From Hydrolagus colliei (taxonomy: Eukaryota), in the NCBI GenBank assembly GCA_035084275.1, contig CM068756.1:14384001-14448000 (forward strand): a stretch of DNA of 64,000 nucleotides. Reading direction: 5' to 3'. Positions 409 to 64,000 of the stretch are shown one piece after another. The notes beneath the pieces were generated by a model, which saw only the letters and a program-made list of their open reading frames with translations, searched no databases and was not told where the DNA came from. Position 1 is the stretch's first letter; each line of letters starts with the position of its first letter. The translations under genes and the position numbers were made by a program.

Positions 409-552
409 TTATTTAGTTCCTGGTTCTCTGAGATAAGCGGCGGCTGCTTCTCGGTGATGTCTCACATGCAGCTCTGCTTACTCTGTATTATTAACGGGAG
501 TCCAATTCAACCAGCCGTGAGCCACCGCCTCGTTCTCTGCTCCGGGTATCAT
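409..552 (-). pseudogene. G1 relic terminal exon (fused exon A/B), now downstream of the stop codon
   Basis: Acceptor ttttacag|ATG. It reads MIPGAENEAVAHGWLNWTPVNNTE*, with the ITIM Tyr replaced by His and the second Tyr codon read as TAA (478-480). The ancestral REPGTK* ending is at 409-411. Confidence 0.75.
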
Positions 553-929
553 CTGTAAAACATAACACATTGGTATTTCTAGAACATCTTTCATGTCGGG
601 AGCACATCCTCCGGCACCGATAGATTGTTGTTTTCACTGTTCTGAAGCGGGCTGTGAGGGACATGAGAAGGAAAGCTCTTTCCAGTTTCTGATGCGAATG
701 AGAAACAATTTTCCTTTTATTCTTATTATATGAAAATCAACTTGTTTCTCATTCGCATCAGGAACTGAAAATATTTCCCTCTCATTTTCACACATTATCA
801 TCCACACATAGGTCTCTTTGAAATGAGTTGTTTAGATTTCTTTTTTTCATAATTTTAAACAAAGAAAAACTGGAAAAACGCAAAATTTCGGTCTGGGGTA
901 CCAGCCTGAAATAAAGGCACCCACTCTTC

Positions 930-3900
930 TCACTGGCACAGTTGCTTCTGGTTTCTGCGAGGGCTTTTGAAAGAAATTCAATAAATCAAGTAATATTAAT
1001 TTTTGATGATATATTGCTTAGACCAAATGAAGAGCGTTTCGAAGCTAGCAAGCTGCCAGTCTGTCTTTTTTTCTAAAAATACATAAAGTTGTCTGTTTGC
1101 ATCAGATTGATTTTATTATACTCTAATCTAAACCCAGATGCAGAGAGTGGCAGAAATCAGACAATCACCAATTGATCACCACTCTCATTCCTTCTGCCTT
1201 TCCTGTGCCTGCTTCAATCAACGTCGTTGATGTAACAAGCGAGAGAATAGATGATTGAGGGTATATAATATAAAACTAACAAGGTAATATTAAACTTTTA
1301 TCAAGTGATGTGGAACTGTTCCTTTGGAACAAAGACATTTGGGTGTCGACCTGAGGAGATCTTTAGAATCGTGAGGTTAGCAATCCCATGTCGGGGGTAA
1401 TGGTTGAGACAAATGCACATTAGCTTTGTAAAGGCTACTCGATATAACATCTAAAATGAGTGAAATGCTAGAGTGTAAGGAAGAGGTAGATACATCTCAA
1501 AATGCATCTCTTTGACCTCAGTTTAAGTCGTCCTTCCTCTCCCCACAACTCAATCCCACCGCGGGCTGGGGAGCTGGGCCGGTAGTGAGATGTGTTTGGG
1601 GGATTGCCTCCAGACTTGAATGACGCTCGAAATATATATATTTGTGGTGCATTGTTAAATGTCGCCATAAGTTAAAATAACCTCTTTGACCCAAATTCAG
1701 AGTTCTACAGCTGTGTTTCTATCGATAACTGATACTTCCCTCCATTTATATGAACAATCTGCATTTGGGTTCAATTTGGGGCACTATTTCCAAATTTGCC
1801 AACGAGACAAAAAACGAACCTCAGAGTGAAGCGGGTTGTAATTCCATTGAAGAGACATTGTGGAAACCACAATGGTCAATTCTGTGGTTGTATCACAACC
1901 GATTTCAGAAATTCGTTGCTTGCAAATTTCCGATTAAATACGCAGCTAAACACACGCAGAGGGGCGAGTGTGTGAGGACATTGGCATTTGTGAATCGATC
2001 CCATCATAATGTATTAATCATTGGCTCTGCTTTACACGATTTCGCTCAGATTTTCGCTCCTCGTCACCCGGGATTCCCAAACCTGTAAAAAATGTATTGT
2101 TGGTATTGAATGATATATTTACATTCAAGTTAAATAAAATAGGAATACATCTTACCCTTCTCTTTTTTTTAATAATTGGCATTGATTCCCAATGACGACC
2201 AAAAGCAGCAGAATTACCAGTCCTCCCCCTGCACATCCAGCGAAGATTATGTAGTCAGTGTGAGACTCACTCTCTACAGGAAACACCATAAAGTGAGTGT
2301 GTTAGTGACCCCGGGAATGAGTTTCAGGAACAGCAATCTAGCAGGACATAGAGGAATTTAAGATACACGTTCGATATATATCATTTGATATCTTCATGTA
2401 ATAAATAAATATTGCATCGTTAGGGTAAACTAATTGTTGAATTTTCAGGGTTAGGGTTAGCGTTAGGGTTTTCAACAAAAATATAAATACTTTCCAATCC
2501 TAACTCAGCGAACATCGAGTGGTCGCGGGACGTTTGTGAGTTACCTGTGTTGGATTTCGAAACCGAGTAGACGGCAATCACCGGACTGCTGAGGGTCACG
2601 TGCTTTACCACACAGGTATAAACAACCCCTCCCTGTACAGGCTGCGTGTCCTCCACATTAACCTCGAACAGTCCATCCGAGTTCCTCTCCTTGGTCAAGT
2701 TTATCCCAGTTATAATTTCACTGTCGCCTCTATACCAAGTGAGCGTTATATCCCCCGGGTAAAAGCCGGCCGTTTTACACACGAGAATCCGAGACGTCAA
2801 TGAATCTCTGGCGAATATCTCCGGCGGGGTCGGGGAGGCTGCAGGACAGATGATGGAGTTACTTGTGATCAGTTGGAATCTACAAGTTTATTACCGTTTT
2901 GAATTGTATGTGAAATGTTTTCCTGCAACAGTACAAGAAGGAAAGTCGCTCTGAGACACTAACCATAGGACGGGCACAATACAAATGTCGTTGCCATCGC
3001 AAGGAATCATTCATTGTGACCGAAAGAGACCGATCCTGTTTTGTTTAAAACAATGTTCAGGGTAGGAAGCGTTAAAACGTGCTTTGCAGGAATTCCTGGA
3101 TGAAGTGATTCAACTGCGATGATAAAATGGGTTAAATGGTTTACCCCATTCGGGTACGTTTGATGGGTTTGGGAATGATGGGAGGTGATTTGTTTGAGCT
3201 GTCAACGAATGTCACAACAGAGTTAGGACGGATCATTTTAGTGGAGGAGAGAGAATGGAAGTCTGTCCCTCTCCAAAGTTTTGTGCCTAAACCTGTTAGA
3301 TGTGAAACGCAACAGCTCGGCTCACACGCGGGTCAGTAAAAATGACGGAATCCACTCCCTCGGGTGGCTTCAGACGCCGATTGAAGGGGATATTTAAATG
3401 CGAGAGAGATAAAAGATTTGAAGCGAGATTGGACGGTGGCGGGTGCAATTCAATTCAGAGTTCTGCAAACCTTGTCTTGCAACAATAACCCGTCTTTACA
3501 AAGCGCTCTGGCTCATAGAATAGCGTCCCGGGGAAAACTGGAGATTTCACTATAATTAGAGAATAGAGATATAAAGAAAACCTCCCCATTCACACCGAGA
3601 TTTATTTGGCTTTGATTTGCGTTTCTGAAATTTGATAAGTTTCCAGCAAATTTTTGCATGATGAGCATAGATCGTTCAAAAATAATCGAAGGAATGATTT
3701 GCGGGACATTGTTTTACGCAGATTGTTCAGGACATCAAATGTCGCCCGCCTTTGTTTACACATTTAGCTTTCAAATAAATGAGTAAATTGTACATTTACA
3801 TTTCAAATCAATGAGTCAATTGTAAATATCTGGAGAATAGGTCAAAGTGGTTTTGATTAATAATAATAATAATAATGCTTGCGTTTGATAGTCACTGTTT

Positions 3901-5426
3901 CCAATGATTTACTGTAAAGTGAGGCGACTTTGTTAGGGAACATAGCAGCCAATGTTGCAGAACACAATGCACTGCAAATAGCCACTAAGCGAATCACCGA
4001 TTGTATCTGGGGATTGTTTCACTAGCCAGCTCACGGGGAGGAAGAATCTGGTTTCTTCTTTCGAATAGTTTCAGGTTGATCTTGAATATCCACCAGAACA
4101 GGCGGAATGGATCTCGCTTCAGCGCTTCATACAAATAGCTGGAGCCTCAAGCCACAGCTGGAGCTCTCCCCTAGATTGTCCTTGCCCTAGGCATTAGACT
4201 GTCAGTGTACAGTGTGATCTTACGTATTGCCGTGGGACAATCTGAATCAATGCGTTTAGAACAGAATAAAGTATCACATATGGTTCAAATTCTACTTGCG
4301 GCGGTAGGTGAGATACATGTATTTGAAAGGATTGCTTATTAACGCAGTTATAAAGGAACCCAAACTCCCAAACTCCCACCAGTCCCGTGGCGATGGGACA
4401 GAATTGTACCAGATACATATTCTACGGATCAATGTGTTTCGGGTTAAAATAATAATAATAATCCTTGCATTTGATATAGCGCTTTCCACATCTTATCAAC
4501 GTCCCAAAGCGCTTCACAGAATATACTGTAAAGTGAATTGATTGTATATTTGTGGGCGAATCGCTGCAGCCAATTGCGCACAGCAGTGTCCCACACACAG
4601 CCGGGATTGAAATGACCAATGTTATTATTGTGGTATTTTGGGAGGGATTATTATTATTAGGTGTGTGGAGTAAGGAAACTTGCCCAAGGTTTCGCCCTGA
4701 CCTGCCTGGATTCGAACACAGGTCTCCCCATGCAAGACAAGTGATCTAACCACTGAGCCACAAATCTGTTCCCCCGTACTGCGCGATCACAGCCTTTTGT
4801 GGGAGTTGTAAATGAAACAAATAGTTTTCCCGCCACAATGTCAATTTGCCACAACACGTTCCCGGTTACTGTTGTGTCCAGACTTACCGTGTACGGTCAA
4901 ACTTGACCCGGTTCCATTCTCTACTCTTCTCCCCTGAAGGATGACTGCGCAGTGATAGACGCCGCAGTCGTTCACATTCACGTTTAGAATCTGGAACGTA
5001 TTGACATCAAACCTTTTCCTGCGGTCGGGGCCTTGGTGTAAATAGTCGCCCTCTCCTCGCTTCCACCAGCGAAACGTGAAGGGCGATTCGTGTTGAAAAT
5101 CTGTAAACTTGCAGCCAAAAGTAACGTTTTCTCCTCGCATCACTGTCCGGTCCCCGGGATATTCAATCACTTTCGCCATCGCATCACCTGCAACTGAGAG
5201 AAAATAACGCAAATCCGTAATAAGCGATTGCAGAGTGGAAGAAATGCGACGATTGCTGTTGGGAGAGAGAGAGCGAGAGAGAGGAGGTGGAGGAGTGAGA
5301 ACGATGGACTCACTCACTGAACACATTTTGAAATTGTTCATCGATATCGATCTGTGTTTAAATGCATTGTTGTGAAAAACACGAACCTGTGAAGATAATC
5401 CCCATAAGAGAAAGACAGGGGAACAT
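930..5426 (-). CDS. G1: SIRP-like V-C1 Ig-superfamily receptor with short tyrosine-free tail
   Basis: Exons: leader 5387-5426 (MFPCLSLMGIIFT), V 4888-5193 (C..WWK..GVYHC..NGTGSSLTVH), C1 2545-2838 (CKTAGFYP..W..YTCVVKH), TM 2156-2273 (IIFAGCAGGGLVILLLLVVIG), cyt1 921-963 with in-frame TGA at 930-932. All junctions are GT-AG. Confidence 0.8.
4450..4775 (-). mobile_element. tRNA-derived Deu-type SINE
   Basis: On the minus strand: A-box-like GCTCAGTGG, B-box GTTCGAATCC, a conserved core (tgtgggacactgctgtgcgcaattggctgc), an L2-like tail and (TAA)n. Many further copies occur in the window. Confidence 0.75.
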
Positions 5427-8046: not shown

Positions 8047-8150
8047 CTACAAAGACAACGATTAAAATCTGTGAAGCATTTCAAGATGTTTGTAGTTATA
8101 GGAGCCACAATAATAATTACAAAATCGGTCCATTGGTCATCCAAATGATT

Positions 8151-8459
8151 TGCCATCTGAGCCCGGCTGGAGATACTAATTCTCACCCAGTTTCCACCAT
8201 TCAACAGTCACAGCGGAATTATCAGAAGGGGAGAAAATGCACCTAAAGGTAACATTGGCAGCTATGATGACAACAGTGGTTTCAGGGGTTTGGGTCACTT
8301 TGAGGGGAACATCGGCAGCCACTGTCAAAGATAAATACAAACTTTATGTATATGTATTTAACAAATAATACAAAAATATAGATTAAGAGAACCATATGAA
8401 ATACCTGGGCCAATGGCAAGAATTACGAGATACAGAAACACAATCCGTTTGAAAATCAT
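8151..8459 (-). pseudogene. Psi-A: leader plus 5' half of a V exon of an internally deleted SIRP-like gene
   Basis: Leader 8405-8459 MIFKRIVFLYLVILAIGP|gt, followed by an 83-nt intron. V fragment from 8321 reads VAADVPLKVTQTPETTVVIIAANVTFRCIFSPSDNSAVTVEWWKLGEN*YLQPGSDGK (TAG 8176-8178), then jumps into intron sequence. Confidence 0.8.
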
Positions 8460-10689: not shown

Positions 10690-10729
<40 letters not shown>

Positions 10730-11320: not shown

Positions 11321-14300
11321 TTATGCGGTTGCTGTTTCCATGACAGTGACAGCTTTGTATTTCCTGATATTTACTTCCGCATACTCTGAATTCTTGCCGC
11401 TGGGTTTAGCTTTTCCTGTTTGTTTGGAGCGAGGTAAATCCAGATCAGCGTAGGTCAGCTTGTCAGGGGCGGTTCCTCGCTTGGTCTGAAAAAGAACAAT
11501 GTTTGGGATTGTCTTTTTGCTGGTTCCATGTATAGATGTACATAGAATGGTACGGAAACTGGACAGCCAGTGTTTATACTTCACACGACATCCATCCTTG
11601 CCTATTTTCTTCTGTTCCTCTCGAATCTCTTCTCATTTATGCAACAAGTTTTATGTTGATAGTAATGTTACATTATTGTGAACCCATCATCCCGTGGCCA
11701 ATTGGTAAATATAATTCAAACTGCGATATCCAGCTGCAGATTTAAGGGCTGTAGATCTCAGCGACGAGCTGCCAGCCACTTTCATGTGTTGGTCCAGATT
11801 GGTTATCGCTGCCATTCCTAATTGCTCTATGAAAAACTAACATCTCAGGACATTTGAATAGGAACACATGTGATCCTCTTTAAATTATTTGGTGAATTGT
11901 TGCTTCTTGTATAAAGATACAATCTTAGCAATTGATAGCCTGGAAATGCTCTTTTAAACTGATCCGTTTTATAAATTTCCTTTATCGTCAGATAATAAAA
12001 TGATATTAGGTAAATCCTGAAAGGCTGAACGCGTTCGACAACCAAACGCAGCATCCAAAAGTGTTAGAAGATTCGATGGGATGGGATGGGGGTGGATTGG
12101 GGGAACAAAATCAAGGACAAATTTGGTTACCTGGGCGTATACTGTCCTCTCTTCCTGGTGTTTAGCTCTTGTTGTTTTATTGGAACTTTTCAAATCCAAT
12201 GTTACATAAGCCACATTGTCGCCCTGTGCTCCCTCCCCCATCTGTAAAACAAAATATAGAGTTAAATGGTTCCTCGATTGCCTTCCTTAATCCGTACTCT
12301 TTGACCATGGTATTGAATCAGTAGGGATTTTAGAGGAAACAACGGCTGTCTTCAAGTTGAATGGTTAAAGACAGATAATATTCAGTAAGAAGATCGAATT
12401 CTCTCTAGAGGCAGTGAAATTCATGTTTCCAACTGAGGTTTTGCCATGTACCCCCAGTGAAAATGTATTGCTGATTAAATGGATCAAACAAGAATTCTCA
12501 CTTAAAGTATTATCATTTAAAACATGCAGTTCCCAGTCACAGGCCTGACTTGGAAGGATTACTAGAAAGGTAAGTTACTGCCAGCAAACCGTGTTTATTC
12601 AAGGAACAACTTAATCCTGAATTGGGAAATAGATAGGTGTATAATTATGTAGGAATGATGCTAAGCTTGGGAAGTTTTAGTCCATACTCCAATTAAACGT
12701 AAGCCTGTCTTGTTGTGATGGGATGAGATGTGAACGGTGTCCTGGCGAATCATAATCAAGATAACTTAGTGATACACTTCGACAGCAACAACAAAATTGC
12801 ACGTGTATAGCGCCTTTCACGTCAGGAGGACGTCCGCAGGCGCTGGACAGTCACTGCTTCAGACCCGAGCTGAGGACAGGGGTGGGGGAAGGAAGTGGGG
12901 GATTAGGATTTGCCCATGGGTCCATCGAAGAGAAGTGTCTTGAGGCGAGACTTGAAGGAGGCCAGGATGGGGGTGAAACGGAAGGACTGCGAGATGGAGT
13001 TCCAGAGGTTGGGGCAGAGTGGTTGAAGGCTCGCCCACCAATGTTGAGGTGGGTGGATCGGGGAACGTGGAGAAGGCCAGAGCCTGCTGAGCAGAGGGTT
13101 GGTTAGGAGGTCATGGATGTAGAGTGAGGCGAGGTTGTGAAGGGCTTTAAATATGAGCAGCAGGATCTTGAATTGGATCCTCTGGTCCACGGTTTATAGA
13201 ACCATATTGAGTGCAAATTGGTTGTAGCAAATAGAGTCGCTACAATGATAACGATTAGCAGCCGTGAAGACATTTGGAATTATAGGGGCCACAATGATAA
13301 TTACTAAATTACCATGGTATTGGAGGAGAGGGTAGGAGAAATGGATAGAATAATTATAATCAGAGAGGAAGTTCTAAAAAGGTTGACGTCGCTCAAGGTG
13401 GATAAGTCACCTGGTCCGGATGGGATGCACCCTAGGTTACTAAGGGAGGCACGGGAGCAAATAGCAGGGACTCTGGCCACGATCATTCAATCTTCCTTGG
13501 ACACAGGGGTCATGCCAGAGGACTGGAGGATAGCTAATGTTACTCCCTTGTATAAAAAGGGGCAGAAGGACAAGCCTGGTAACTACAGACCAGTCAGTCT
13601 AACGTCGGTAGTGGGCAAACTTCTAGAGACCATAATCAGGGACAAGATAGATCTTCACTTAGAAAGATATAGGCTAATAAAGGACAGTCAACATGGATTT
13701 GTTAAAGGCAAATCTTGCCTTACAAATCTGATATAATTTTTTGATGAGGTAACGGAATGGGTGGATAATGGTAGCGCAGTTGATGTAGTTTACATGGACT
13801 TTCAAAAGGCATTTGACAAAGTGCCACATGAGAGACTTATAAGGAAATTAAAGGCCCATGGCGTAAAAGGGACAGTGGCAGCGTGGATCCACAACTGGCT
13901 GCGAGACAGAAAGCAGGGAGTTGTAGTGAGCGGCTGTTTTTCAGACTGGAGGGAAGTGAGCAGTGGTGTGCCACAGGGATCAGTTTTGGGACCATTGCTG
14001 TTTGTAATCTACATCAATGATCTGGACTTGGGTGCACGGAGTACAGTTTCCAAGTTTGCAGATGACACTAAGTTAGGGCGAATAGTAAATAGTGAGGAAG
14101 ATAGTAGCCATCTGCAAGAGGATATAGACAAATTGGTAAAGTGGGCAGACACATGGCAGATGAAGTTTAATGCAGAGAAGTGTGAGGTGATGCATTTTGG
14201 GAGAAGAAATGAAGGGAGGCAATATAGGCTAGATAGTACAATTTTAAATGGTGTGAAGGAACAGAGAGACCTGGGGATTTGTGTTAGTGACTCATTGAAG

Positions 14301-19926: not shown

Positions 19927-20268
19927 GAAAGGCCGATTGAGCGTGCCGCACAGCAGTTCCCTATACCGTATTGTAACAGTTAAAGAGCTATTTTCTAATC
20001 AAATAATTCAGCAGTTACCTTTATGGATTGATCAGATTCACAGTGAATACATTTTGGCAATTAAATATGGTTATATGTGTATTGTAAGCAATATTTTCCG
20101 ATGAATTTCCTGAGAACGTATTGCTTAACAAACTAATAAATGCAATTATGGTTTAAGCAGCTGCAAATAGAATAGTTGCACAGAATTAATGTGCACGTTA
20201 TTCACTGTGGTGGATAAACTGTATCTAATGTACACCCCACACCAATACCAGTTTCTATCCCTGATGCA

Positions 20269-50700: not shown

Positions 50701-53700
50701 TTCTAAGGTTGCTCAAGAGACAAAAGTGAAACTAAGAGTGAAGAAGATAGTAATTTCATGGAAGAGATATCAAGTCTAGTAGATTGGATAGACAAGTGGC
50801 GGATTAAATTAAATCGAGAAAAGCATGGTTGAACATTTTGTGATTTGTGCCCGGTCCTGACAGGATGCTGTGGGAGCAGTGGCCAGGGCAGAATGTGCAT
50901 TTTATATAATCAAACATTCTCTACCTGTATTTTGTAAAACTAGTTCATTGTGGCGCAATGTGGAAAAGGCAGATAGATGGGTTGTGGACTATTCAAAGAG
51001 TGAATAAAGAATCTGTGTGCTGAATGGCCTTCTATCCACCACGTAGTCCCTCCACCTCACCCCGTCCCTGGCCTCCTTCAAGTCCCGCCTCAAGATTCTC
51101 CCGTTCGATGGATCCATCAGCACCTCCTGATCCCCACTTTCCTCTCTACCACCCTGTCCTAAACTCGGGTCTGAAACACTAACTGTCCAGTACCTTGGGA
51201 AGTCCTTCTGACGTGAAAGGCGCTATAAACAAGTGTAATTTTGTTGTTGTTGTATGCCTTAGCCTTCTGTAGTTGTATCACAACAGATTTCAGACATTCA
51301 TTGCACGGAAATTTCTGATTAAATATACACGGGAAGAGATTCTGTTAGGTTATTTGTAATTCAATCGCAATAAATCGACGATTGTCATCACTTTACCAGG
51401 ATGTCTTTCTCTCCTTGTCACCTCGAATTCTCTCACCGATTGACTGAATTTTTGTACTAAATTAAGCATTTCCATTTAATCTCAATGGAATAGGAATACA
51501 TCTCACCTTTCTTTGTTTTTAATTGGCATTGTTTGCCAATGATGATCAAAAGCAACAGAAATACCAGGCCTCCCACTGTACATCCAGCGATCAGTCTGTA
51601 GTTAGGTAGAGCAGCATGTTCTACAAGAAAAGCATAAGTTGAGTGTGTTTGGGATCCCAGCAATCAGTTATAGTTTCAGCAACTGTACGATGCACCAGAA
51701 TAGGGATGTTTTAGCAGGTTTTGCTACTGTTTTTTTAAAATTTTTAAACAAGGTCTTGGCAGGTTTGTAGCAGTCCAAGGCAATGTTGATGAAAAACCAG
51801 ATAGTCTAGATGATGAACAAGACCTGGAATTGCAGGACAGTCACAGTGGGGGAAGGTTCTTGGGCAACCTTTGCCAAATGCTATTCTGAATAGGCTAGAA
51901 AGATGAGTCTGTCCAGGGAGACAAAGCATATTGCAATCCAAAGCACATTGCACCGAACATTGCACCGAACATTGCAATCCAAAGGAAAAATTAGATGTGG
52001 ATGACATTATTGAGCAGGGACCAGGAATTTCAATTTTGATGAGTTTTAAGAATCCTTTTTCTTGGGGAGATGGTACAAATCTTTTCAATTCAAAGACTGT
52101 ACACATGAAGCTGCATGTTATTTTATATATGTTTCTATGGATACTGGGCAAGAAAATGATATGGTTGTCTATATATAATTTAAATATGTTTGAATAACAA
52201 TTTAGTTAACAACAATTAATAGTAGGATATTGGTAGATGTGTGGAGTCCTGTAGTTTAGTGGTTAGAGTAATAGTGTCGCAAGCGAGAGACCATGGATTC
52301 GATAGCCGAGCAGGGCAAAATGTTGGGCAAATTTCCTTACTCTATATTCTGTTCACTTAGCAGTAAGTATGAATCCAGTTGTTGGTCAATTTGTGTATCA
52401 CTTTCCCAGGGATAATAATACATTAAAAACACTGTTTAAAAATTTTAATTAATAATTTTGTCACTCAATCCATGACTCTTTGTGGGATACTGCTATGCGC
52501 AATTTGCTGCCACAATTTGTCCACAAAATATACAGTCAATTCACTTCACAGTAGCTCTTTCAAATGTCTCGAAGATGTGCTGTGGCTCTATATCATATGC
52601 AAGGATTATTATCATTATCATTAAATTACCTGGGATAGAAACTGTGAATCTCGAAACTGCTGGAATCCGGAGGCTGTTGTGAGACACGGAACAGGAATAA
52701 ACAACCCCGCTCTGTACAGGCTGCTTCTCTTCTAAATAGCTGGAAACTCTGTAAAGGCCATTTGAATCCCTTTCTTTACTGGAATTTATGCCAGTTTTAA
52801 CTTCATTGCCATTTTTACTCCAGGTGAGTGTTATATCTTCAGGGTAAAATGCAGCCGTTTCACACACAAGAGTCAGAGGCTTTGTTGAATCTCCTTCAGA
52901 TTCTCTGGAGAATATCGTCAGCGGGGTCGGGGGGACTGTAGGACAGACAATGGTGGAGAATCAGTTAATTGTGATCAGTTGGAAGGTTAGACTTTATTCC
53001 CATTTGAATTCTCTTTAAATTGTTTCCTTACAACATTATAATAAACAAGATCCTCTGAGATGTTACCACACATTAAGGGCACTATGTTGCAAGTTATTAA
53101 GCAATCTGGAGGGAACTGATCCTGTTCGGATCTTTTATTTCAAACACTGTTAAAAGATGCCTTGGAGGAGGTCTTTCCACTATTCAGCAGATTATTAGCT
53201 TGATGAAAGGATTTAACTGTGACAAGAAGGTGCGTAAACATGGTTTATATTGATAGATTGGAGATAATTTGATTGGGCTGTCAATGAATGATAACATATT
53301 GCATGATGCATTCTTCTGATAGAGGTATACAAATAGAAGGAGACATAATTCTGATATTTTGGCAAAGTGTATTAGGCCTGATATGAAAGTTAAATGTATC
53401 AACGGGGACGGAAAGTGGTGAACAAATTGGATTCAAATTTATTCCACCATTCTCCAGAACAGTGGAGATTTCACCATCAACAACAACAACAATTTACATT
53501 TATAGAGCGCCTTTCACGTCGGGAGGACGTCCCAAGGCGCTGAAATTTGAGATATCAGCAAATCTCCCCATTAACACTAATATTCCTTTTGTTCGGTTGC
53601 ATTTGTTTACATTCTATGAGCTTTGAACCAACTTACCATAATTAAAATAAGAAATTCAAAACCATTTTATGACTATTGATGTGTGCAAATTTGTGCAAAT

Positions 53701-55429
53701 TGTCAAAGATTTTAAACATCTGTCTTTCATACAAATCAGAGATTCTGATCATTATTCTCATTAGTATTGTCTGTAAACTTATTAGTGTTACTGTTAGTAT
53801 ATAATAAGTAGTATTATTGTTGCATTAATATTAATAGAAATAATAGTAAACCTTGCAGTCAATATAGGGCCGTTTGTATTGAGATGACTTCTCAAAGCAT
53901 TTTCATATGATTCACTATAAAAGGCGGTGATTTAGTAAGGAGACCACAGCAGCCGGTTTTGCATGCAGCAATGTGCCATAAACAGCCATGGAGTGAATAA
54001 CAAACATTATCTGGGGATTCGTTGGCCAGGACACGGGAGGAACAATCTATTTTCTGTTTTCGAATATCACATGGTCTTTAACCTGAACAGGCAGAAGGGA
54101 CCTCAGTTTAGCGTCTCATCCAAATAAGGGGGAACCTCATGGAATTGTATTAGACTGTCAGTGTACACTGTGATCTTCAAGTTTTGAATCGGGACAATTG
54201 GAATAAATTTGTTGAGAACCGAATCAAATATGAGGTGGAATTAATTTTCTACATGTGACATTAGGAGGGTTATAAATGTTTGAAGGCATTGCTGAAAACA
54301 ATTATTGAGCAACTTAGATTCCACTTTGATGTGTGTGGTATAAATCTGCCAGCTCCTATGAATACAATTTTAAAAATTGCAATACTTTATTTGAATATTC
54401 TGTTAATAAAAATAAGTCAGGTTGAAATTTTAAAAAACCTCGGTGCTTTATTATCATAAATTTGTATCAAAGCAGAAAATTAAAAAATTAAGTAGGCATA
54501 AAATAATTTATCCAATACTGTTTCAAAATGCTGGCATGGACAGCCTTTCAACATTCTCTCTTACTATTGTATTCACACTCACCATGTACAATTAAACGCG
54601 ATCCAGTTCCATTCCCTAATGCTTTCCCCTGACAGATCACTGCACAGTGATAGACTCCTGATTCTTGGGAAGTCACATTTAGGAGTTGGAATGATTTGAA
54701 ACCAAATATTTTTCTGTTGTCGGGTCTTTTATGTAAGTATTCACTCTCTCCTTGCTTCCACCAGTGAAATGTTAGATCTGAACTGGGTTGGTTACCGGCA
54801 AACTTGCAGCTGAAGGTAACGTTATCACCTTGGAGTGCTGTCCGGTCTAAAGGATATTGAATCACTTTCATCGATGCATCACCAGCATCTGTGAGAAAAC
54901 AATTAAAACCATGCGTTGGTGATTATAGTGTTGAAGAAAGGTAACAAATTAACTATAGAGAATAATAATACTAATAATAATAATGCTTGCATTTGATATA
55001 GCACTTTTCACATCTTCTAGGCATCTCAAAGCACTTCACAGAATAAAGTGAATATGTGGGTGAAAGGCGGCAGCCAATTGTGCACAGCAGTGTCCCACAA
55101 ATAGTCATGGATTGAAATTACCCCCAAAAAATTTCAAGGGATTATTATTAGGTTTGTGGAGTAAGGAAACTTGCCCAAGGTTTCACCCTGCCTGGAATTG
55201 AACCCAGGTCTCAAGCTTGCAAGGCGAGTACCCTAACTACTGAGCTACATGACTCCACAAGACTCCCGGGAAAGGAGGGAAAGAGGATGCAAGAAAGTGA
55301 AAGAGTGAGAAACATTTTGAAACTATTCATCAATATTATTTTGCACTTAAGATGCGCTGCAGTAAAACACTTACCTGTGAAAATAAACCCCATTACAGAA
55401 AGATAGAGGAACAAATCATTCGCCATCAT
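47726..55429 (-). CDS. G5: intact inhibitory SIRP-like V-C1 receptor
   Basis: Leader 55375-55429 (MMANDLFLYLSVMGFIFT), V 54583-54888, C1 52630-52935, TM 51507-51620, cyt1 48882-48925 (GPLENQRGSEHFEDQ), exon A 48404-48514 (VDYVTL...TVYAE), exon B 47726-47899 (MTYASL...TEYAEL...REPRSK*). The frame is open. Confidence 0.9.
49085..49780 (-). mobile_element. L2-type LINE 3' fragment
   Basis: L2 tail plus CNLGVRF..LSF.PHI and PWSMPL motifs. Confidence 0.7.
52243..52625 (+). mobile_element. Deu-type SINE ending just past the G5 C1 donor
   Basis: Head GGAGTCCTGTAG, core and (ATT)n tail. Confidence 0.7.
54975..55260 (-). mobile_element. Deu-type SINE in the G5 leader-V intron
   Basis: Full-length match to the family. 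Confidence 0.75.
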
Positions 55430-56110: not shown

Positions 56111-59100
56111 TCACATTTATAATATGTATATTATCAGGAACAATATGTTTTTAAAGCTGAAAAACAGAGTTTAGGAAGCTTCATTCTCTCCAGTTTAACA
56201 TCATCTTTAGGCTTCACCATTGTTTGGAATCTAATGAAAAGCACACGGAAAACCAAAATGATCTTTGAATCAAACACAAAGATTTTAATTATTTAATGTT
56301 TATTGCATCTATTTGTGCATGGCAATATCACAGAAGCAAGTATGAAGTCACTGGCCAATTTTCCCCAGAGGACACACTTCAGTATAAGAGTAATGCTAAG
56401 ATCTTTAACTTACACCTGACCAGGCAGCCTGGATAAGAACAGCAACTTGCATACATACATATTATATGTTAACATGGGAAGCATCTCCGAGCATCTTGAA
56501 CTTGAGCATTCTCAAGGCTGAGACTGATAGATTTTTTTTAAATAGAGGGATTAGGGGATATGGGTATAGGGAAGGTAATTAGCGTTAGGTCAGAAGGTCA
56601 GCCATGATCTTATCGAATGCCGGGGCAGACTCGAGGGGCTGAATGACCTACTCCTGCTCCTAATTCTTATGATCTTATGTTCTAACTGCACCCACAACAA
56701 GGCAAAGAATCCCATTACAACACCCTAGAATATGAGCAGCAATCAGTAGAAGTGAAACATATGTACGTTCTGGAGGGTTAGACTATGTATGTTTTGAGCG
56801 CTCTAACAACTGAGTAACAGGGCTCCACTAATTATTAGAAACAGGAACCCTGCATTGAACAAGAGGCCACATACATACTATTTAAAGGTGAAACCCTGAA
56901 AGTTCACTCAGCAAAAAGACGAACAAGGAGTTGTTTTCTTTTTGTTTTCCAAACTACAAAGAGTGTAAATAAACTGTACTTGAATAATATGTTTAACGAA
57001 GGAAAGGAATGATGCAGAAGAAGGTGACATTATTCCGTCTGATGGCAATCATGTGTTCTGAGACTTTGACTGAAAAATCACCAGTAACTATCATAAAAAA
57101 TAACAAGAACCAGATTGCTACAGTAAAATACACACCCACCACCACCCAACCCCATGATTCTGATCAATTTTGACCTGATGGTCTGTAACACAATGACTTG
57201 CAACAATGCTACACAGATGTTTTACCCACAGAAACTTCTGTGTCATTTGACTTCCTGTCTTTGAGGGTTCAGGAAATTGAATTTGAGTTGCAAGTGCAAT
57301 TTGTAAGGAAACGTGATCACGAAAGCTATGACGAGTTAACCCAATCCGTTGGTCGCACATCTAGCCTTCATGGCAGTATTCAAACTCATGTTGTGTACGG
57401 AGGGATGCTGGGGTTGACTGATACCAATTTGGTGGATCATCACATCTTCAGATAGTTCCATACAGCTATTGATAGAAACCAATAGGCAACAAAATAATTA
57501 GATCCATCTTCACGGATATCACGGATATCTATGTAATTATTTTTTCTTATCTGGGTGTCAAATCCATGCAGAAACCCATCACCATGTTTAAGATCCCACA
57601 AAGTAAATTAAGAGTTCCATGCATCCCGATTTGGTGTGGAAATTCCCATGTATTGGGAATAGATCCTCTCCCTTGCAGGGAAAAATCCTGTTTAGCTAAT
57701 CCTAGAGAGTATTAATAACAGGCAAAAGCCAAGTTCTGGGGACTCTAGTTTGCCATTTAACAATTGACAAAGGCAGGTTTTAGCCCTCACTTGGTGGACA
57801 TCAGGTAGCAACACCTCCCTATGAAAGTCTTGGTGGGCATCACTGCTCAGTGTGAAATGTTTGATATAGACTCAATTACTCTGCTCACAGTTTGGATAAG
57901 CATTTAGCGATGAGAGTGCAGTGGGAGAGTGACATAGAGAGGGGCAGAGAGAGCGGCTGTGAATGGCAGTGGTGTTGGGGATGGGGTGGTGTTCACAGAA
58001 TGAGAGAGAGCCTGAGAGCGTGAGAGAAAGAAACAAGAGTAAATTAGGGAGCACAGAGCTTAGGGATTCAGAGTTGGAGAGAGTGTGTGTGTGTAGGGCT
58101 GGAGTCCCTTCAAATCGCTCCTTCCCTCGTCTCTTTCAAGGCACATGAAGAACTCTTTGACTGCCATCGTTTCCTCTCCCCAACTCCTCCCTTGTCTTAC
58201 ATCCCTAGCTCAGGTGCTCAGCCAGGAATGTCAGCGGTTTGACATCCCCACTTCCCCGAAAAGGGTACTTGTGTAAACGTTGTTATGTATATTGAAGTGT
58301 AACACACATATATTACATATACAGCCTACAGATGTTTCTTAAATAGGGCATTCAGTGCTGAACAGCCAAAAGGCTGGACCAACCTGTCCTAGAGTATATG
58401 AGTTCCAAGTCCCCATATGGAGCTTGAATCTAAAAACTTCTAACTCAGAGGTGAGGAGTCTTCCAAATGAGCCAGACTGATGCACTATATTTGGTTCACT
58501 TCACACTCCTCAGCAGACTTATTTGAGCTATTTGGATGTATTTTTAAAATGAACAACATCAAATCATAACAGGACTCAGTGACACATGCTAAGCCTGTAT
58601 GGATAAAAGCTTAAATAAGAGGTAAAGATGCTTCATTCTCTACATGGTAACATTAGTTTCATGTCAAACTCTAATGAATAAAATCAACAGAGATCTGAAC
58701 GCTCTGGGGCTAATGAAGTGGGTATGAGGGGGTGGGGGGAATGGGGGGGTGGGGGGCGTGGGATGGTTCTGCTTTTTTTAAGCATTATAGGATACCATTG
58801 AAGAAGTCAGAGTTGGAGTGGGAAGGAGGAATAAAGTGGCAAGCAACCAAAAGCTCAGGGTTACACTTGCGAAAAGAAGCGAGCTGTGCGGCAAAGCGAT
58901 CTAGGTTCCAATCTAGGTTTGGTCTCAACGACCAGAGATGATGGATTCAAAACGTGTTGCTTCAAGAACAAAGTAGATACATTAATCATGAATAATAATA
59001 ACTCAGGATATCAGGATACAGTACTGTATATAGTGACGCAACATGTCAAGCGACTGCCAGGATAGTGAAAGGCGACCTGATGGACCTTGGTCTTCTTTCG

Positions 59101-59885: not shown

Positions 59886-60525
59886 GGAGTCCTGTAGCTC
59901 AGTGGTTAGAGCACTCACCTTAAAAGCCAGCGACCTGGGTTCAATTCCAGGCAGATGAAACCTTGGACAAATTTCCTTACGCCACATGCCTAACAATAAT
60001 CGCTCAAAAAAAATTGATAATTTCAATCCATGATTGTTTGTGGGACACTATTGAGTGAAATTCGCTGCCACTTTTTGCCCATATACAGTAAAAGCCCATT
60101 TATCCATGACCCGATCGACTGGATTGCGTGACCCCCTCCTGGGGCAATTCCCCATTCCAGCAATCGTGAGTATGCTCACTTCATGCATGCGCGCAATACG
60201 TGCGCATGCGCATTTATTAAATTTACGAGCTCTAGGTTTCTACAGATCGGTAGAAAATGCTTTTTTACTGATCATTTTTTTACCGAGTATTGGAATCTTT
60301 ATTGGTAAGTATCCATACAATATTCTGTTCCTATTTAGCATATTATTAATATGGTATGTTTTAAAATAAGTAAATTTTTTGTGTTGGGTTTTCGGCAACT
60401 TGCCGCCTGATTATCCGACACAGTCAATTAGTCGACCCAATGTGTGCCGGATAAACAGCTTTTACTGTATATAGAGTCAATTCACTTTACAGTATATTTT
60501 GTGAAGCGCTTTGAGATGGCGAGAA
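59886..60525 (+). mobile_element. Deu-type SINE interrupted by a MITE
   Basis: Head GGAGTCCTGTAGCTCAGTGGTTAGAGC. The tail resumes at 60470. Confidence 0.75.
60086..60467. mobile_element. Tc1/mariner (Tigger-like) MITE, 382 bp
   Basis: TIRs CAGTAAAAGCCCATTTATCC / CAGTAAAAGCTGTTTATCC, with TA TSD. Confidence 0.8.
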
Positions 60526-62180: not shown

Positions 62181-62364
62181 TTTTGCGTTTGATCACCAAT
62201 GACTGCCTAATTTCATGTGTCTCTAGGACGGTATCAATTTATTATTACACTGTTCGTATTTTCAACTTATCTTCAACATTGTCCAGCCTCTTGTGAGCAG
62301 AGTTTATGATCGATGATATGAATATTAAAATGATAACCAAGTAACAGATATGGAAATTATTACA

Positions 62365-63894
62365 CTAAGATATTGTTTCATGTTGTTCCAGACACCTGGA
62401 TATTTGGAGGAGATATCTTTATATCCACTGATTATTAGAGAATCCTCCAATATAACAAATTGTCATGTCCACAATCTAAACAGTCTGGTCCCGGTTAGCA
62501 GCGAACAACATAAATTTGATTCCTGTTGATTGATAATTTTATGGGCTACGATACAAATACAATAATGTGAATCAAATCACAATATTATTTTGAAGCAAAG
62601 AATGCCTCCTTACCTTTCAAGTTGTGAGATTTTAACATGGTCAACAATGAAGATGGTCAACACTATCACTACCAAGAAACAGGATATATACCGTGAAATC
62701 ATCATATTCTCTGACATTCCACGATAACCTAGAAAACAAATATTGGAATGCAAAAGGATTTACATGGAAACTATTCAATAATTAGGCTTTATTGGGAAAA
62801 TGCACACGTTCTTAACTATTTTCTATTGGAAGCTACAATGAGGTGGAGGAATATTATAAACTGTGCATTCAATTGATTGAAAACAGTAGAGAATAGCAGT
62901 GAATACCAATGCACAGGCAGTTTATTAGTGCTGTTTTAGAGATGTGTTTATATATTATGTGGTAATAGTTCCCCTGAGACTGTGTGCTCAACTTCAAATG
63001 TACCAGAGAGAATGACTCTTCAGACCCAAGCTGTGGCCACTATCGTAATCAAAACTGATTCCATTGGACATCTACTATTAAACTGAATTTCTTTAAAACA
63101 TCTCACAAAAGAGTTTTATTTTAATTACGGTGATTTTTGTTCCAAAGGAATAAGTAACAAAAGGTTTGTTCAAAAAATTAATCAGAAAATTCAATGGATT
63201 GATTAACAAATATTATTTGTTTCATTTGTACGTATGTATTAGTCCAAAAGTTTGATTTCTGATTTCAAACCTAAATATAGGTGGGGAGAGGACTATTGCA
63301 GGACTATTGCAGTTTGGCATGTTACTAAATGCCACAAAAGTAATGAACTTATTTGAAGGGAAGATATTTAGAATTTAATGGATAAACAAGAAATACTCAG
63401 ATCTGAGATATTCTTCGATTCAAAGACTCTACATTTATAGTTGCTAGTTTTGTATATATTAAGTCTACAGCGGGAAGATTGGATGCCTACAAATGGTGGC
63501 GTAAATAAATGTAAATATATTTTCTAGTAGCAAGGTGTTAAACAACAAAAGACTGCAAAACAAGTAGGCATCCTACCTTCCAATGCTGTGTACACTTTAG
63601 GAACAGTGTAGACGGCAACCACTGGAGATTGGAGGGGGACGTTAGATGCCAGACAGGTATAAACAACACCGAACTATACAGGTTGTGTGTCTTCCATATA
63701 GCTAGAAACTTCATAAAGTCCATCTGTATTCTTCTCTTCAGTAAAATTTATCCCAGTTATAACTTCACTACCTTTATTCCAAGTGAGCGTTGCACCGTCG
63801 GGGTAAAACGCAGCCGTTTTACACACAAGAATCTGAGATGTTGATGAATCTCTTTCAGAATCTCTGGGGAATATCCGCAGGGGGGTCGGGGGGA
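62365..63894 (-). pseudogene. G6 (3' part): activating-type SIRP-like receptor with Arg in TM and a nonsense codon in C1
   Basis: C1 63577-63894 has an in-frame TAG at 63674-63676. TM exon 62614-62728 reads GYRGMSENMMISRYISCFLVVIVLTIFIVDHVKISQLE. A candidate last exon 62365-62395 gives RCLEQHETIS* (uncertain). V and leader lie beyond the window. Confidence 0.75.
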
Positions 63895-64000
63895 CTGTAG
63901 GACACACATTGGAGTAAAATCGCGTTACTTGTGATTACTTGGAATATAAAACTTTATTCCCATTATTGTTGTTGTCCGAACAAGTTGTCTGGATTGTAAC

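What the first reader, a model, noticed from the sequence alone, without database searches (positions are those of the whole stretch)
409..64000. Tandem cluster of paired V-C1 SIRP-like receptors built from interchangeable ectodomain and signalling modules
Seen: seven related units on one strand, all using symmetric phase-1 Ig/TM exons. Three have neutral TM plus ITIM/ITSM tails, one a stub tail, one an Arg TM, and two are deleted relics. Known: mammalian SIRPs (alpha inhibitory, beta activating via a TM basic residue, gamma tailless) have a VJ-type V domain plus C1-set domains and evolve as paired receptors. Inferred: a chondrichthyan SIRP-like paired-receptor system with a single C1, remodelled by birth-and-death and exon shuffling. 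I cannot tell whether it is already described.
Basis: partly seen in the sequence, partly recalled or inferred. Interest (0 to 1): 0.85.

Follow-up and report, generated by a model that had tools for sequence, protein, structure and literature searches.

The report
Chimaera paired V-C1 immune receptor cluster
The window is part of a tandem array of immune-receptor genes of a chimaera-like cartilaginous fish, each with one variable-type and one constant-type antibody-like domain and either an inhibitory, an activating or a cut-short signalling end; the family resembles mammalian SIRP but is just as close to NKp30/B7-H6 and is already present, under inconsistent automatic names, in public shark and ray annotations.

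Summary
On the minus strand there are three intact seven-exon genes (U2, U3, U4; 378, 373 and 369 aa). Each has a split leader, a VJ-type V exon, one C1-set exon, a neutral TM exon and three tail exons carrying four tyrosine motifs. U1 has an early stop in its tail (263 aa). U5 is cut by the window edge; it has an Arg...Asp TM exon and one in-frame TAG in its C1 exon. There are also two gutted relics and several exon fragments. Copies are 65-88% identical including introns, so this is not a haplotype artefact, and dN/dS is 0.2-0.6.

The SIRP reading is only partly supported. SIRPα is among the best structural matches, the C1 falls in a clade with SIRP d2 and B7-H6 C, and the tail aligns colinearly with SIRPα's four tyrosines. 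Against it, there is one C1 rather than two, and the activating TM carries Arg/Asp rather than Lys. The V profile scores human NKp30 highest, and V as sister of SIRP d1 is marginally rejected (AU p=0.027). B7-H6 is at least as good a sister for C1.

The family occurs across chimaeras, sharks and rays. It is best called a chondrichthyan VJ-C1 paired-receptor family of unresolved orthology. Function is inferred, not shown.

The parts
63577..63894 (-). U5 C1-set exon (318 nt, phase 1-1) with an in-frame TAG at 63674-63676. The U5 V exon lies beyond the window end.
   Evidence: tblastn; translation; 85-86% nt identity to the U3 C1 region.
62610..62728 (-). U5 terminal exon: stalk, Arg...Asp transmembrane segment and stop ('YRGMSENMMISRYISCFLVVIVLTIFIVDHVKISQLER*').
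   Evidence: The motif is conserved in C. milii and sharks.
57002..57088 (-). Weak relic of a type-B V exon upstream of U4.
   Evidence: tblastn E 0.01-1.3; translation. This is a weak call.
55375..55429 (-). U4 leader exon (MMANDLFLYLSVMGFIFT + 1 nt; donor GTAAGT).
54583..54888 (-). U4 VJ-type V exon (306 nt, phase 1-1), ending ...GNGTGSRLIVH.
   Evidence: V-only AF2 model pLDDT 90.
52630..52935 (-). U4 C1-set exon (306 nt).
   Evidence: Pfam C1-set 77.7 bits.
51507..51620 (-). U4 stalk and neutral TM exon (114 nt).
48882..48925 (-). U4 cyt1 exon (44 nt, phase 1 to 0; GPLENQRGSEHFEDQ).
48404..48514 (-). U4 cyt2 exon (111 nt; VDYVTL and TVYAE|T).
47726..47899 (-). U4 cyt3 exon with stop (MTYASL and TEYAEL).
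40290..40344 (-). U3 leader exon.
39773..40078 (-). U3 V exon (306 nt).
36980..37297 (-). U3 C1-set exon (318 nt).
36734..36825 (-). Fragment of the 3' end of a C1 exon, just downstream of the U3 C1 exon.
   Evidence: tblastn (E 0.3-0.4). This is a weak call.
35731..35844 (-). U3 stalk and neutral TM exon (114 nt).
33252..33295 (-). U3 cyt1 exon (44 nt).
32861..32971 (-). U3 cyt2 exon (MAYATL and TVYAQ|T).
32252..32494 (-). C1 exon relic with two stops, lying in the U3 intron between cyt2 and cyt3.
30167..30340 (-). U3 cyt3 exon with stop (MTYASL and AEYAEL).
   Evidence: 88% nt identity to the U4 copy.
21267..21332 (-). Relic R21k: the first ~20 codons of a type-B V exon; the rest is deleted.
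20860..20931 (-). Relic R21k: cyt1 exon with a stop.
20244..20452 (-). Relic R21k: hybrid cyt2/cyt3 exon with the 'TE*AEL' stop.
19202..19253 (-). U2 leader exon (MGSVVFLYLSVLTFILT + 1 nt).
18722..19042 (-). U2 V exon (321 nt; type B with a 5-residue insert).
17410..17745 (-). U2 C1-set exon (336 nt).
16866..17101 (+). Inverted copy of the 5' part of the U2 C1 exon and adjoining intron (96.6% identical to 17842-17606).
15903..16010 (-). U2 stalk and neutral TM exon (108 nt).
15203..15246 (-). U2 cyt1 exon (44 nt; GSQGNPTRSGNLEDW).
   Evidence: Found with C. milii orthologue P0065.
12131..12241 (-). U2 cyt2 exon (VAYVTL and TVYAQ|T).
11321..11485 (-). U2 cyt3 exon with stop (LTYADL and SEYAEV).
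8149..8328 (-). Relic of a type-B V exon (5' half, one stop), upstream of U1.
5387..5426 (-). U1 leader exon. The ancestral ATGATG is lost, so it starts at an internal ATG; the donor is GTTCGT.
4888..5193 (-). U1 V exon (306 nt).
2545..2838 (-). U1 C1-set exon (294 nt).
2156..2273 (-). U1 stalk and neutral TM exon (118 nt; 4-nt insertion in an A-run).
930..963 (-). U1 cyt1 exon. The acceptor is shifted by 1 nt, which restores the frame; a TGA ends the protein ('GPRRNQKQLCQ*').
385..560 (-). U1 decayed hybrid cyt2/cyt3 exon, lying beyond the stop. It has the same junction and the same 'TE*AEL' as R21k.

Best explanation
The window is a 64-kb slice of a large tandem array of non-rearranging immunoglobulin-superfamily receptor genes. 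It comes from a holocephalan (chimaera) other than Callorhinchus milii.

Gene structure (shown): each gene has a split leader, one V exon with a built-in J-like G-x-G-(T/S)-x-L-x-V strand, one C1-set exon, a stalk/TM exon and short cytoplasmic exons.

Three signalling formats are shown from sequence:
1. A neutral TM plus a tail with two tandem pairs of tyrosine motifs (U2, U3, U4).
2. A terminal TM exon with an Arg near the outer leaflet, an Asp 17 residues further on and almost no tail (U5; its C1 exon carries a TAG in this assembly).
3. A neutral TM with the tail cut after about 20 residues (U1).

Inferred mechanism: the V domain binds a cell-surface or pathogen ligand. In the long-tailed forms, phosphorylated ITIM-type tyrosines recruit SHP-1/SHP-2-type phosphatases and dampen the cell. 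The Arg-TM forms pair through the charged TM with an ITAM adaptor and activate. The position of the Arg fits an FcRγ/CD3ζ-type adaptor better than DAP12. The stub form would bind ligand without signalling.

How the array changes (shown): block duplication, unequal crossing-over between the two homologous tail exons, swapping of the region downstream of the C1 exon, and decay.

Evolutionary placement: the family is chondrichthyan-wide and belongs to the same branch of VJ/C1 proteins as SIRP, NKp30 and B7-H6. My data do not make it the orthologue of any one of them.
For: Gene models: full-length ORFs over seven GT-AG exons for U2, U3 and U4.

Domain identity:
- Pfam V-set/Ig_3 plus C1-set.
- C1 hallmarks FYP, 13 residues from Cys to Trp, and CxVxH, read directly from the sequence against the criteria in PMC2785349.
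- G112/G114/L117/V119 invariant across 13 family members.
- AF2 ectodomain pLDDT 80-90 and V-only pLDDT 90.

Selection: dN/dS is 0.2-0.6 at dS 0.27-1.5 between paralogues.

Distribution: the family profile finds 208 proteins at E<=1e-30. All those I looked up, apart from two reptile multi-V proteins at the bottom of the list, are from chimaeras, sharks, skates and rays.

Activating module: the R...D TM module is conserved from C. milii to Heptranchias, Heterodontus and Chiloscyllium.

Comparison locus: the C. milii cluster spans at least 15.35-15.66 Mb of MU249845.1 and has the same gene structure.

Module exchange: the shared hybrid exon, and U3/U5 C1 homology that ends about 160 bp into the downstream intron.

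Relationship to known families.
Against: No expression, protein or binding data exist for this locus; everything functional is inferred from motifs.

The only activating-type unit in the window has a premature stop and lacks its V exon, so pairing within this window rests on one damaged copy plus relatives in other species.

The second tyrosine motif is TxYxxT after splicing, so it is not a canonical ITSM.

Reference sampling for the trees is thin.

Domains of about 100 residues resolve deep nodes poorly. The family V clade itself has only 84/94 support.
Confidence: 0.75

Rival explanations
1. These are true SIRP co-orthologues: the chondrichthyan version of the SIRP locus, with one C1 domain lost or not yet duplicated.
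For: - Foldseek ranks SIRPα d1 first for the V model (E 4e-8, TM 0.75).
- SIRPα 2wng has the best TM-score for the two-domain ectodomain (0.43/0.50, rmsd 4.6).
- C1 lies in a starred clade with SIRP d2 (97/84*), and C1+SIRP d2 as a clade is not rejected (p=0.29).
- The tail is colinear with SIRPα's four tyrosines at 17-22 bits.
- The NCBI pipeline names most members 'SIRPα-like'.
Against: - One C1 instead of two.
- Arg/Asp in the activating TM rather than Lys.
- The V profile prefers NKp30.
- V sister to SIRP d1 gives AU p=0.027.
- B7-H6 C shares the same C1 clade.
- A 2026 survey dates the SIRP family to Tetrapoda (PMC13262535).
- The tail similarity is at the level of short motifs that many ITIM receptors share.
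Confidence: 0.18
2. The family belongs to the NKp30/B7-H6 lineage. It would be what earlier work on B7-H6/NKp30 co-evolution 'from sharks to mammals' counted as shark NKp30 and B7-H6 genes, with V close to NKp30 and C close to B7-H6.
For: - The family V HMM scores human NKp30 highest (40.2 bits) and the family C HMM scores human B7-H6 C highest (59.0 bits).
- NKp30 3pv6_B gives the best TM/rmsd for the V model (0.76, 2.8 Å).
- AU does not reject V+NKp30 (p=0.27). C1+B7-H6 is 0.32 lnL better than the free tree.
- The activating TM uses Arg, as NKp30 does.
- NCBI names some members NCR3-like or NCR3LG1-like, and C. milii annotates an isoform without the C1 exon as NCR3-like (P0009).
- Some family members (P0101, P0133) have basic tails without ITIMs, which is ligand-like.
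Against: - The score margins over SIRP are small.
- B7-H6 V scores poorly (16.7 bits).
- NKp30 has no C domain and no ITIM tail, and B7-H6 has a long unrelated tail.
- In sawfish the genes curated as NCR3 sit in the MHC next to ddah2. I could not show that this cluster is MHC-linked.
- The key paper (Immunogenetics 2012, PMC3709836) is not held in the library, so the equation with its shark genes rests on my memory of its abstract.
Confidence: 0.3
3. The genes encode ligands or adhesion molecules (B7- or nectin-like) rather than signalling receptors, and the tyrosine motifs are incidental.
For: V-C ectodomains are the B7/butyrophilin format. Pfam also gives weak C2-set_2/C2-set_3 matches for U4. 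Some relatives lack ITIMs.
Against: - Four tyrosine motifs at conserved spacing are kept between paralogues at dS 0.4-0.8 with dN/dS 0.4-0.5, and are kept in C. milii orthologues (75% identity in the tail).
- A conserved charged-TM counterpart exists across chondrichthyans.
- This inhibitory/activating pairing is typical of receptors.
Confidence: 0.08
4. The array is an assembly artefact (collapsed or duplicated haplotypes), or all units are dead pseudogenes.
For: U5 has a premature stop. U1 has lost its first ATG and carries a frameshifting insertion. There are many relic exons.
Against: - Units differ by 12-35% at DNA level, including introns.
- Three units keep complete ORFs across seven exons.
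- dN/dS is below 1.
- The same organisation is present in an independent C. milii assembly.
Confidence: 0.02

Closest known systems
SIRP family (SIRPα / SIRPβ / SIRPγ; mammals, reported from tetrapods)
   Same: - N-terminal V domain with a J-like strand encoded in one exon, followed by C1-set domain(s).
- A clustered family with inhibitory, activating and tail-less members.
- An inhibitory tail with four tyrosines in two pairs, colinear with SIRPα.
- C1 in the same clade as SIRP d2, and SIRPα among the best structural matches.
   Different: - One C1 domain, not two.
- The V domain is about 15 residues shorter in the C'-D region.
- The activating form uses Arg plus Asp in the TM, not the Lys that pairs with DAP12.
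- V is not the sister of SIRP d1 in my tree (AU p=0.027).
- No evidence for CD47 binding or for synteny.
NKp30 (NCR3)
   Same: A VJ-type V domain, which gives the highest profile score and the best TM/rmsd. Arg in the TM of the activating form. A non-rearranging gene with a split leader.
   Different: NKp30 has no C domain and no inhibitory counterpart. It is single-copy and MHC-linked in most vertebrates. The family genes here all carry a C1 exon.
B7-H6 (NCR3LG1)
   Same: A V + C1-type ectodomain and a single TM. Its C domain is the best-scoring reference and is a possible sister of the family C1.
   Different: The B7-H6 V domain scores poorly. It has a long unrelated cytoplasmic tail, no paired ITIMs and no charged-TM variants.
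Other paired IgSF receptor clusters (NITR of bony fish, KIR/LILR, CHIR, CD300, PILR)
   Same: The same logic: tandem multigene arrays, similar ectodomains joined to ITIM tails or charged TMs, and birth-and-death evolution with many pseudogenes. NITRs also have a VJ-type V domain.
   Different: Their membrane-proximal domains are I-, C2- or absent, not C1-set. No NITR appears among the sequence or structure matches.
UrIg / UrIg2 (non-rearranging VJ-C1 genes of elasmobranchs)
   Same: A non-rearranging VJ exon with a split leader, followed by C1 domains. UrIg2 is the second-best PDB sequence match.
   Different: UrIg proteins have 3-11 C domains, form disulfide-linked dimers, are secreted or carry long stalks, and have no ITIM/charged-TM pairing (PMC12227049).

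Membership tests
SIRP | N-terminal V-set domain with a germline-joined J-like strand | tested here: met
   Pfam V-set/Ig_3. G-x-G-(T/S)-x-L-x-V is invariant across family members. SIRPα d1 ranks first in Foldseek for the V model.
SIRP | Two membrane-proximal C1-set domains (V-C1-C1) | tested here: not met
   There is exactly one C1 exon between the V and TM exons in U1-U4. The one V-C1-C1 relative (skate P0018) has two near-identical C1 copies, so it is a recent duplication or an annotation effect.
SIRP | C1-set hallmarks (F/Y-F/Y/H-P in the BC loop, 13 residues from Cys to Trp, xVxH after the F-strand Cys) | tested here: met
   For example U4 has C-ETAAFYPEDITLT-W (13 residues) and YSCSVSH, judged against the criteria in PMC2785349. 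Pfam C1-set scores 43-78 bits.
SIRP | V domain groups with SIRP d1 | tested here: not met
   In the ML tree SIRP d1 lies outside the group that holds the family. AU for family+SIRP as one clade gives p=0.027. The rejection is marginal and sampling is limited.
SIRP | C1 domain groups with SIRP d2/d3 | tested here: inconclusive
   (family,(B7-H6 C, SIRP d2)) has 97/84* support, and adding SIRP d3 gives 93/73.
SIRP | SIRPα-type tail: four tyrosines forming two ITIM pairs | tested here: met
   The U4 tail aligns colinearly with 26 mammalian SIRPα tails at 17-22 bits. This is motif-level similarity only.
SIRP | Activating member with a Lys in the TM (DAP12 pairing) | tested here: not met
   U5 and its relatives have Arg followed 17 residues later by Asp. 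Human SIRPβ1 has Lys (P0205).
SIRP | Binding of CD47; conserved synteny with the SIRP locus | not testable with these tools
   No binding assay is available and no eukaryotic genome browser. Only 10-kb flanks of two C. milii genes were seen, and both lie inside the cluster.
NKp30 (NCR3) | Single V domain, no C domain | tested here: not met
   Every unit has a C1 exon. A C1-skipping isoform is annotated in C. milii (P0009).
NKp30 (NCR3) | V domain groups with NKp30 | tested here: inconclusive
   It has the highest profile score (40.2 bits) and the best TM/rmsd. The tree shows a polytomy. AU p=0.27.
NKp30 (NCR3) | Arg in the TM for an ITAM adaptor | tested here: met
   The U5 TM is 'ISRYISCFLVV...'. 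This applies only to the activating-type members.
NKp30 (NCR3) | MHC class III linkage | not tested
   Sawfish NCR3-like genes lie next to ddah2. The chromosomal neighbourhood of this cluster was not reached.
B7-H6 (NCR3LG1) | V + C1-type ectodomain, with C grouping with B7-H6 C | tested here: inconclusive
   The architecture is met. B7-H6 C is the best C reference (59.0 bits), and sister placement is not rejected. However, B7-H6 V scores only 16.7 bits.
B7-H6 (NCR3LG1) | Long cytoplasmic tail of the B7-H6 type, with no inhibitory/activating variants | tested here: not met
   The tails here are 90-115 residues with four tyrosine motifs, or are absent.
Paired activating/inhibitory IgSF receptor cluster (generic kind) | Closely related ectodomains joined to opposite signalling modules within one tandem array | tested here: met
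   The U3 (ITIM) and U5 (Arg-TM) C1 regions are 85-86% identical at DNA level, with dS 0.27. Both formats occur throughout the family.
NITR | VJ-type V plus an I-type second domain; bony fish | tested here: not met
   The second domain is C1-set. No NITR appears among PDB sequence or fold matches.

The most novel reading that the evidence does not exclude
The family is a surviving, little-changed descendant of the ancestral membrane-bound VJ-C1 receptor from which SIRP, NKp30 and B7-H6 later diverged. It would carry an NKp30-like V and a B7-H6/SIRP-like C1 in one chain. It would serve cartilaginous fish as their main polygenic activating/inhibitory NK-cell or myeloid receptor system, a role for which no receptor family has been described in this group.
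Probability: 0.15. Interest if true: 0.8.

Novelty: new member of a known kind. Interest (0 to 1): 0.5.

Why it matters
Paired inhibitory/activating receptor clusters (KIR, LILR, SIRP, NITR and others) drive innate recognition of self and pathogens. For sharks, rays and chimaeras I found no such family described in the searchable literature.

C1-set domains are otherwise confined to antigen receptors, MHC and a handful of relatives. A large chondrichthyan VJ-C1 family with ITIM and charged-TM formats therefore bears on how the non-rearranging relatives of antigen receptors (SIRP, NKp30, B7-H6, UrIg) are related.

It also gives concrete candidates for shark NK-cell or myeloid receptors. One published survey dates SIRP to tetrapods (PMC13262535); showing or excluding orthology here would move or confirm that date.

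Practically, the inconsistent automatic names in public annotation call for a curated family name. They include SIRPα-like, SIRPβ1-like, NCR3-like, NCR3LG1-like, TAPBPL-like, Ig lambda-like and MHC class II β-like.

Tried and rejected
- PDB sequence search with V alone or C1 alone gave only generic hits: multi-Ig adhesion proteins for V and Ig constant domains for C1. Neither SIRP nor NKp30 was listed, so it did not discriminate.
- I spent the second word-index search on a mixed SIRPα+B7-H6+NKp30 alignment, hoping to collect all three families. Only mammalian SIRPs filled the 120 rows. It confirmed my typed SIRPα sequence but gave no NKp30 or B7-H6 orthologues.
- I spent the third search on the U2 tail alone, to ask which tails in the database are closest. 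Only 21 candidates passed the word filter, and the two hits were the C. milii orthologues. That was useless for the SIRP-tail question, but it revealed the missing U2 cyt1 exon.
- My first splice-site scan for the U2 cyt1 exon missed it because of a polypyrimidine threshold.
- Synteny: two look-ups in C. milii landed inside the cluster. Walking out with 10-kb flanks was not practical. The MBE 2023 supplements gave no mapping for scaffold MU249845.1.
- The Immunogenetics 2012 B7-H6/NKp30 paper and the 2015 review are not held. The elephant-shark genome paper has no held supplement.
- I considered alternative splicing between ITIM and Arg-TM exons within one gene, because C. milii P0004 and P0005 share a V. 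I rejected it for the locus examined: there is no Arg-TM exon inside the P0004 gene.
- I rejected haplotype artefact and bulk pseudogene explanations.

Full report
**What is in the window.** The 64-kb window has no gaps and about 40% G+C. Every Ig-type open frame lies on the minus strand. Self-tblastn with the V, C1 and tail pieces finds four complete V exons, five complete C1 exons, four neutral TM exons and three complete sets of tail exons. It also finds partial or stop-bearing copies. Candidate splice sites show that V, C1 and TM exons begin with two nucleotides completing a codon and end with one extra nucleotide (phase 1-1), behind polypyrimidine-AG acceptors and before GTAAGT- or GTGAGT-type donors. 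C. milii homologues located the leader and the 44-nt cyt1 exons.

**Gene models.**
- U4 (55429-47726), U3 (40344-30167) and U2 (19253-11321) each splice into an uninterrupted ORF of 369, 373 and 378 residues over seven exons. The U2 cyt1 exon (15246-15203) was found only after its C. milii orthologue surfaced.
- U1 (5426-930) has lost the ancestral ATGATG and starts at an internal ATG. It carries a 4-nt insertion in the TM exon that is exactly offset by a 1-nt shift of the next acceptor. A TGA in cyt1 then ends it, giving a 263-residue protein with a tail of about 20 residues. Further downstream lies a decayed hybrid of the cyt2 and cyt3 exons (560-385).
- U5 is cut by the window end. Its C1 exon (63894-63577) has a TAG where U3 has CAG. 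Its last exon (62728-62610) encodes 'YRGMSENMMISRYISCFLVVIVLTIFIVDHVKISQLER*'.
- Relic R21k (21332-20244) keeps about 20 codons of a V exon, a cyt1 exon with a stop, and the same cyt2/cyt3 hybrid exon with the same 'TE*AEL' stop as U1.
- A half V exon with a stop lies at 8328-8149.
- Further fragments lie at 57088-57002, 36825-36734, 32494-32252 and, inverted, at 16866-17101.

**Real genes, not chance or artefact.**
- Pfam gives C1-set at 43-78 bits (cut-off 21), and Ig_3/ig/V-set for the first domain, in all four complete ectodomains.
- The C1 exons show the C1 hallmarks listed in the SIRPα structure paper (PMC2785349): FYP after the B-strand Cys, exactly 13 residues from Cys to Trp, and C-x-V-x-H.
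- The G strand of the V domain carries an invariant G-x-G-(T/S)-x-L-x-V across 13 family members. This is a germline-joined 'VJ' domain with a split leader.
- AlphaFold2 models are confident for the ectodomain (pLDDT 80-90) and for V alone (pLDDT 90.2).
- Units are 65-88% identical at DNA level with homology running through introns. The only copies at or above 96% identity are LINE fragments and one short inverted duplication. Collapsed or duplicated haplotypes are excluded.
- Pairwise dN/dS is 0.2-0.6 at dS 0.27-1.5 for V, C1 and tail, so the exons have been kept as coding sequence.

**Module exchange.**
- U1 and R21k share a deletion that fuses the two homologous tail exons at the same point, which is unequal crossing-over followed by duplication.
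- The U3 and U5 C1 regions are 85-86% identical (dS 0.27), but the homology ends about 160 bp into the downstream intron. After that point U3 has a neutral TM and an ITIM tail, and U5 has the Arg-TM exon.
- Between U3 and U4, dS is about 0.39 for V, 0.37 for the tail and 0.74 for C1. This is suggestive of mosaic history, though it is noisy at about 100 codons.
- A decayed type-B V exon sits 1.6-2.7 kb upstream of the type-A genes U1 and U4, and also upstream of a C. milii gene. The duplicated block was therefore larger than one gene.

**Relatives.**
- A database search with U3 returned only chondrichthyan proteins, best from Callorhinchus milii at 55-63% identity and none identical. The U2 tail is 75% identical to its C. 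milii orthologue.
- The window therefore comes from another holocephalan, or at least not from the C. milii assemblies in the collection.
- A profile of 13 members searched against 1.84 billion representatives finds 208 proteins at E<=1e-30.
- All family members looked up are from chimaeras, sharks, skates and rays. Two multi-V reptile proteins appear at the bottom of the list.
- Automatic names are inconsistent: SIRPα-like, SIRPβ1-like, NCR3-like, NCR3LG1-like, TAPBPL-like, Ig lambda-like, MHC class II β-like and uncharacterized.
- In C. milii the genes lie on one scaffold between at least 15.35 and 15.66 Mb.
- The charged TM module (Arg, 16 residues, Asp-His) is conserved from C. milii to Heptranchias, Heterodontus, Mustelus and Chiloscyllium. 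The inhibitory/activating pairing therefore predates the chimaera-shark split.

One search returned a 100% match plus many mammalian SIRPs, and one search gave exact matches to PDB 3pv6 chains A and B. Other outgroups (Ig, TCR, MHC, β2m, tapasin, CD8, PD-1, CTLA-4, MOG, PVR domains) are from memory and unverified.

V domain:
- Profile scores: the family V HMM gives NKp30 40.2 bits, SIRP d1 21-35, Igκ V 30 and B7-H6 V 16.7.
- ML tree: the family is one clade (84/94) and SIRP d1 is one clade (98/96*). The family sits in an unresolved group with NKp30, B7-H6, PD-1, CTLA-4, MOG and PVR, and SIRP lies outside that group.
- AU tests: family+SIRP p=0.027, family+NKp30 p=0.27, family+B7-H6 p=0.38.

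C1 domain:
- Profile scores: the family C HMM gives B7-H6 C 59.0 bits, SIRP d3 up to 57.6, Igλ C 56.9 and SIRP d2 up to 56.9.
- ML tree: the family (96/88*) joins (B7-H6 C + SIRP d2) at 97/84*. SIRP d3 joins next at 93/73, apart from Ig/TCR/MHC domains.
- AU tests: sister to SIRP d2 is allowed (p=0.29). Sister to B7-H6 is allowed (p=0.52) and is slightly better than the free tree. A clade with Ig light-chain/CH1 domains is marginally rejected (p=0.033).

Structure and tail:
- For the two-domain model, SIRPα 2wng has the best TM-score among Fab light chains.
- For V alone, SIRPα d1 is rank 1 by E-value and NKp30 has the best TM-score and rmsd.
- The U4 tail aligns colinearly with the four tyrosines of SIRPα tails at 17-22 bits. 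This is motif-level similarity.

Taken together, the family belongs with SIRP, NKp30 and B7-H6 among VJ/C1 proteins. It resembles SIRP in architecture and signalling logic. It fails two defining SIRP features, namely two C1 domains and a Lys TM, and it is not closer to SIRP than to NKp30/B7-H6.

**Likely mechanism (inferred).**
- Long-tailed members would act as inhibitory receptors through SHP-1/2 recruitment to the ITIM-type tyrosines. U2, for example, has VAYVTL, LTYADL and SEYAEV. The second motif is TxYxxT after splicing.
- Arg-TM members would signal through an ITAM adaptor. The Arg near the outer end of the TM is the arrangement seen in NKp30 and other FcRγ/CD3ζ-coupled receptors, from my own knowledge, rather than the mid-membrane Lys of SIRPβ.
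- The conserved Asp near the inner end is unexplained.
- U1 would be a non-signalling or decoy form if it is expressed.

**Literature.** The searchable library holds no description of this family. A 2026 survey dates the SIRP family to Tetrapoda (PMC13262535). Work on the cartilaginous-fish MHC lists NCR3-like genes next to ddah2 in sawfish. The 2012 paper on B7-H6/NKp30 co-evolution 'from sharks to mammals' is not held. It may already have counted members of this family as shark NKp30 or B7-H6, and I could not check this.

**Verdict.** This is a new, or at least uncurated, member of the known kind 'paired IgSF receptor cluster'. It is of moderate interest for the evolution of VJ-C1 proteins and for finding NK-cell or myeloid receptors in cartilaginous fish.

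Noticed in passing
window 4449-4762, 23738-24044, 46384-46680, 54972-55257, 59885-60092 and at least 15 more copies, both strands: A tRNA-derived SINE family of about 300 bp is scattered through the introns and spacers. The three Rfam tRNA hits (46607-46677, 55183-55254, 59890-59959; the first of these is also ARAGORN's single call, tRNA-Ala) lie in the heads of these elements rather than being free-standing tRNA genes.
   Followed up: partly
window 13314-14708 (+) and 24757-25365 (+): LINE reverse-transcriptase fragments (Pfam RVT_1, 90.5 bits) lie inside the U2 intron between cyt1 and cyt2. The 3' part (14431-14969) is 97.4% identical to 24827-25365, so the element was active recently.
   Followed up: partly
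window 16866-17101 (+) versus 17842-17606: A 236-bp inverted duplication (96.6% identity) covers the 5' half of the U2 C1 exon and adjoining intron, about 500 bp downstream of the real exon. It is the youngest rearrangement in the window and could form a hairpin in the pre-mRNA.
   Followed up: no
window 8149-8328 and 57002-57088; C. milii locus L001 7751-7918: A decayed type-B ('CIFP') V exon sits 1.6-2.7 kb upstream of the leader of the type-A genes U1 and U4, and upstream of the C. milii gene for P0004. The position is conserved in two holocephalans, so the duplicated block held more than one gene.
   Followed up: partly
window 62610-62728; relatives P0005, P0007, P0014, P0026, P0031, P0094, P0095: The activating TM carries Arg and, 17 residues later, Asp-His ('..R[FYL]x15[IV]DH[VFL][KR]'). 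The motif is conserved from chimaeras to sharks. The role of the inner Asp is unexplained.
   Followed up: partly
window 7150-7950: A CT-rich, proline-coding low-complexity tract with strong negative GC skew (-0.23) produces several overlapping long ORFs on both strands. It is very likely simple repeat rather than a gene.
   Followed up: no
family members P0101 (C. milii) and P0133 (Narcine): Some members of the same family have lysine-rich tails with no ITIM and no charged TM; NCBI names P0133 NCR3LG1-like, while P0101 is 'uncharacterized'. P0101 also lies within the C. milii cluster. They could be ligand-like partners of the receptor-like members.
   Followed up: no
P0147 (Carettochelys) and P0152 (Vipera): These reptile proteins have three tandem VJ-type V domains, a TM and ITIM-type tails (EVTYADL..). 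They are the only non-chondrichthyan proteins of receptor size in the top 150 profile hits. Their relation to the family was not examined.
   Followed up: no
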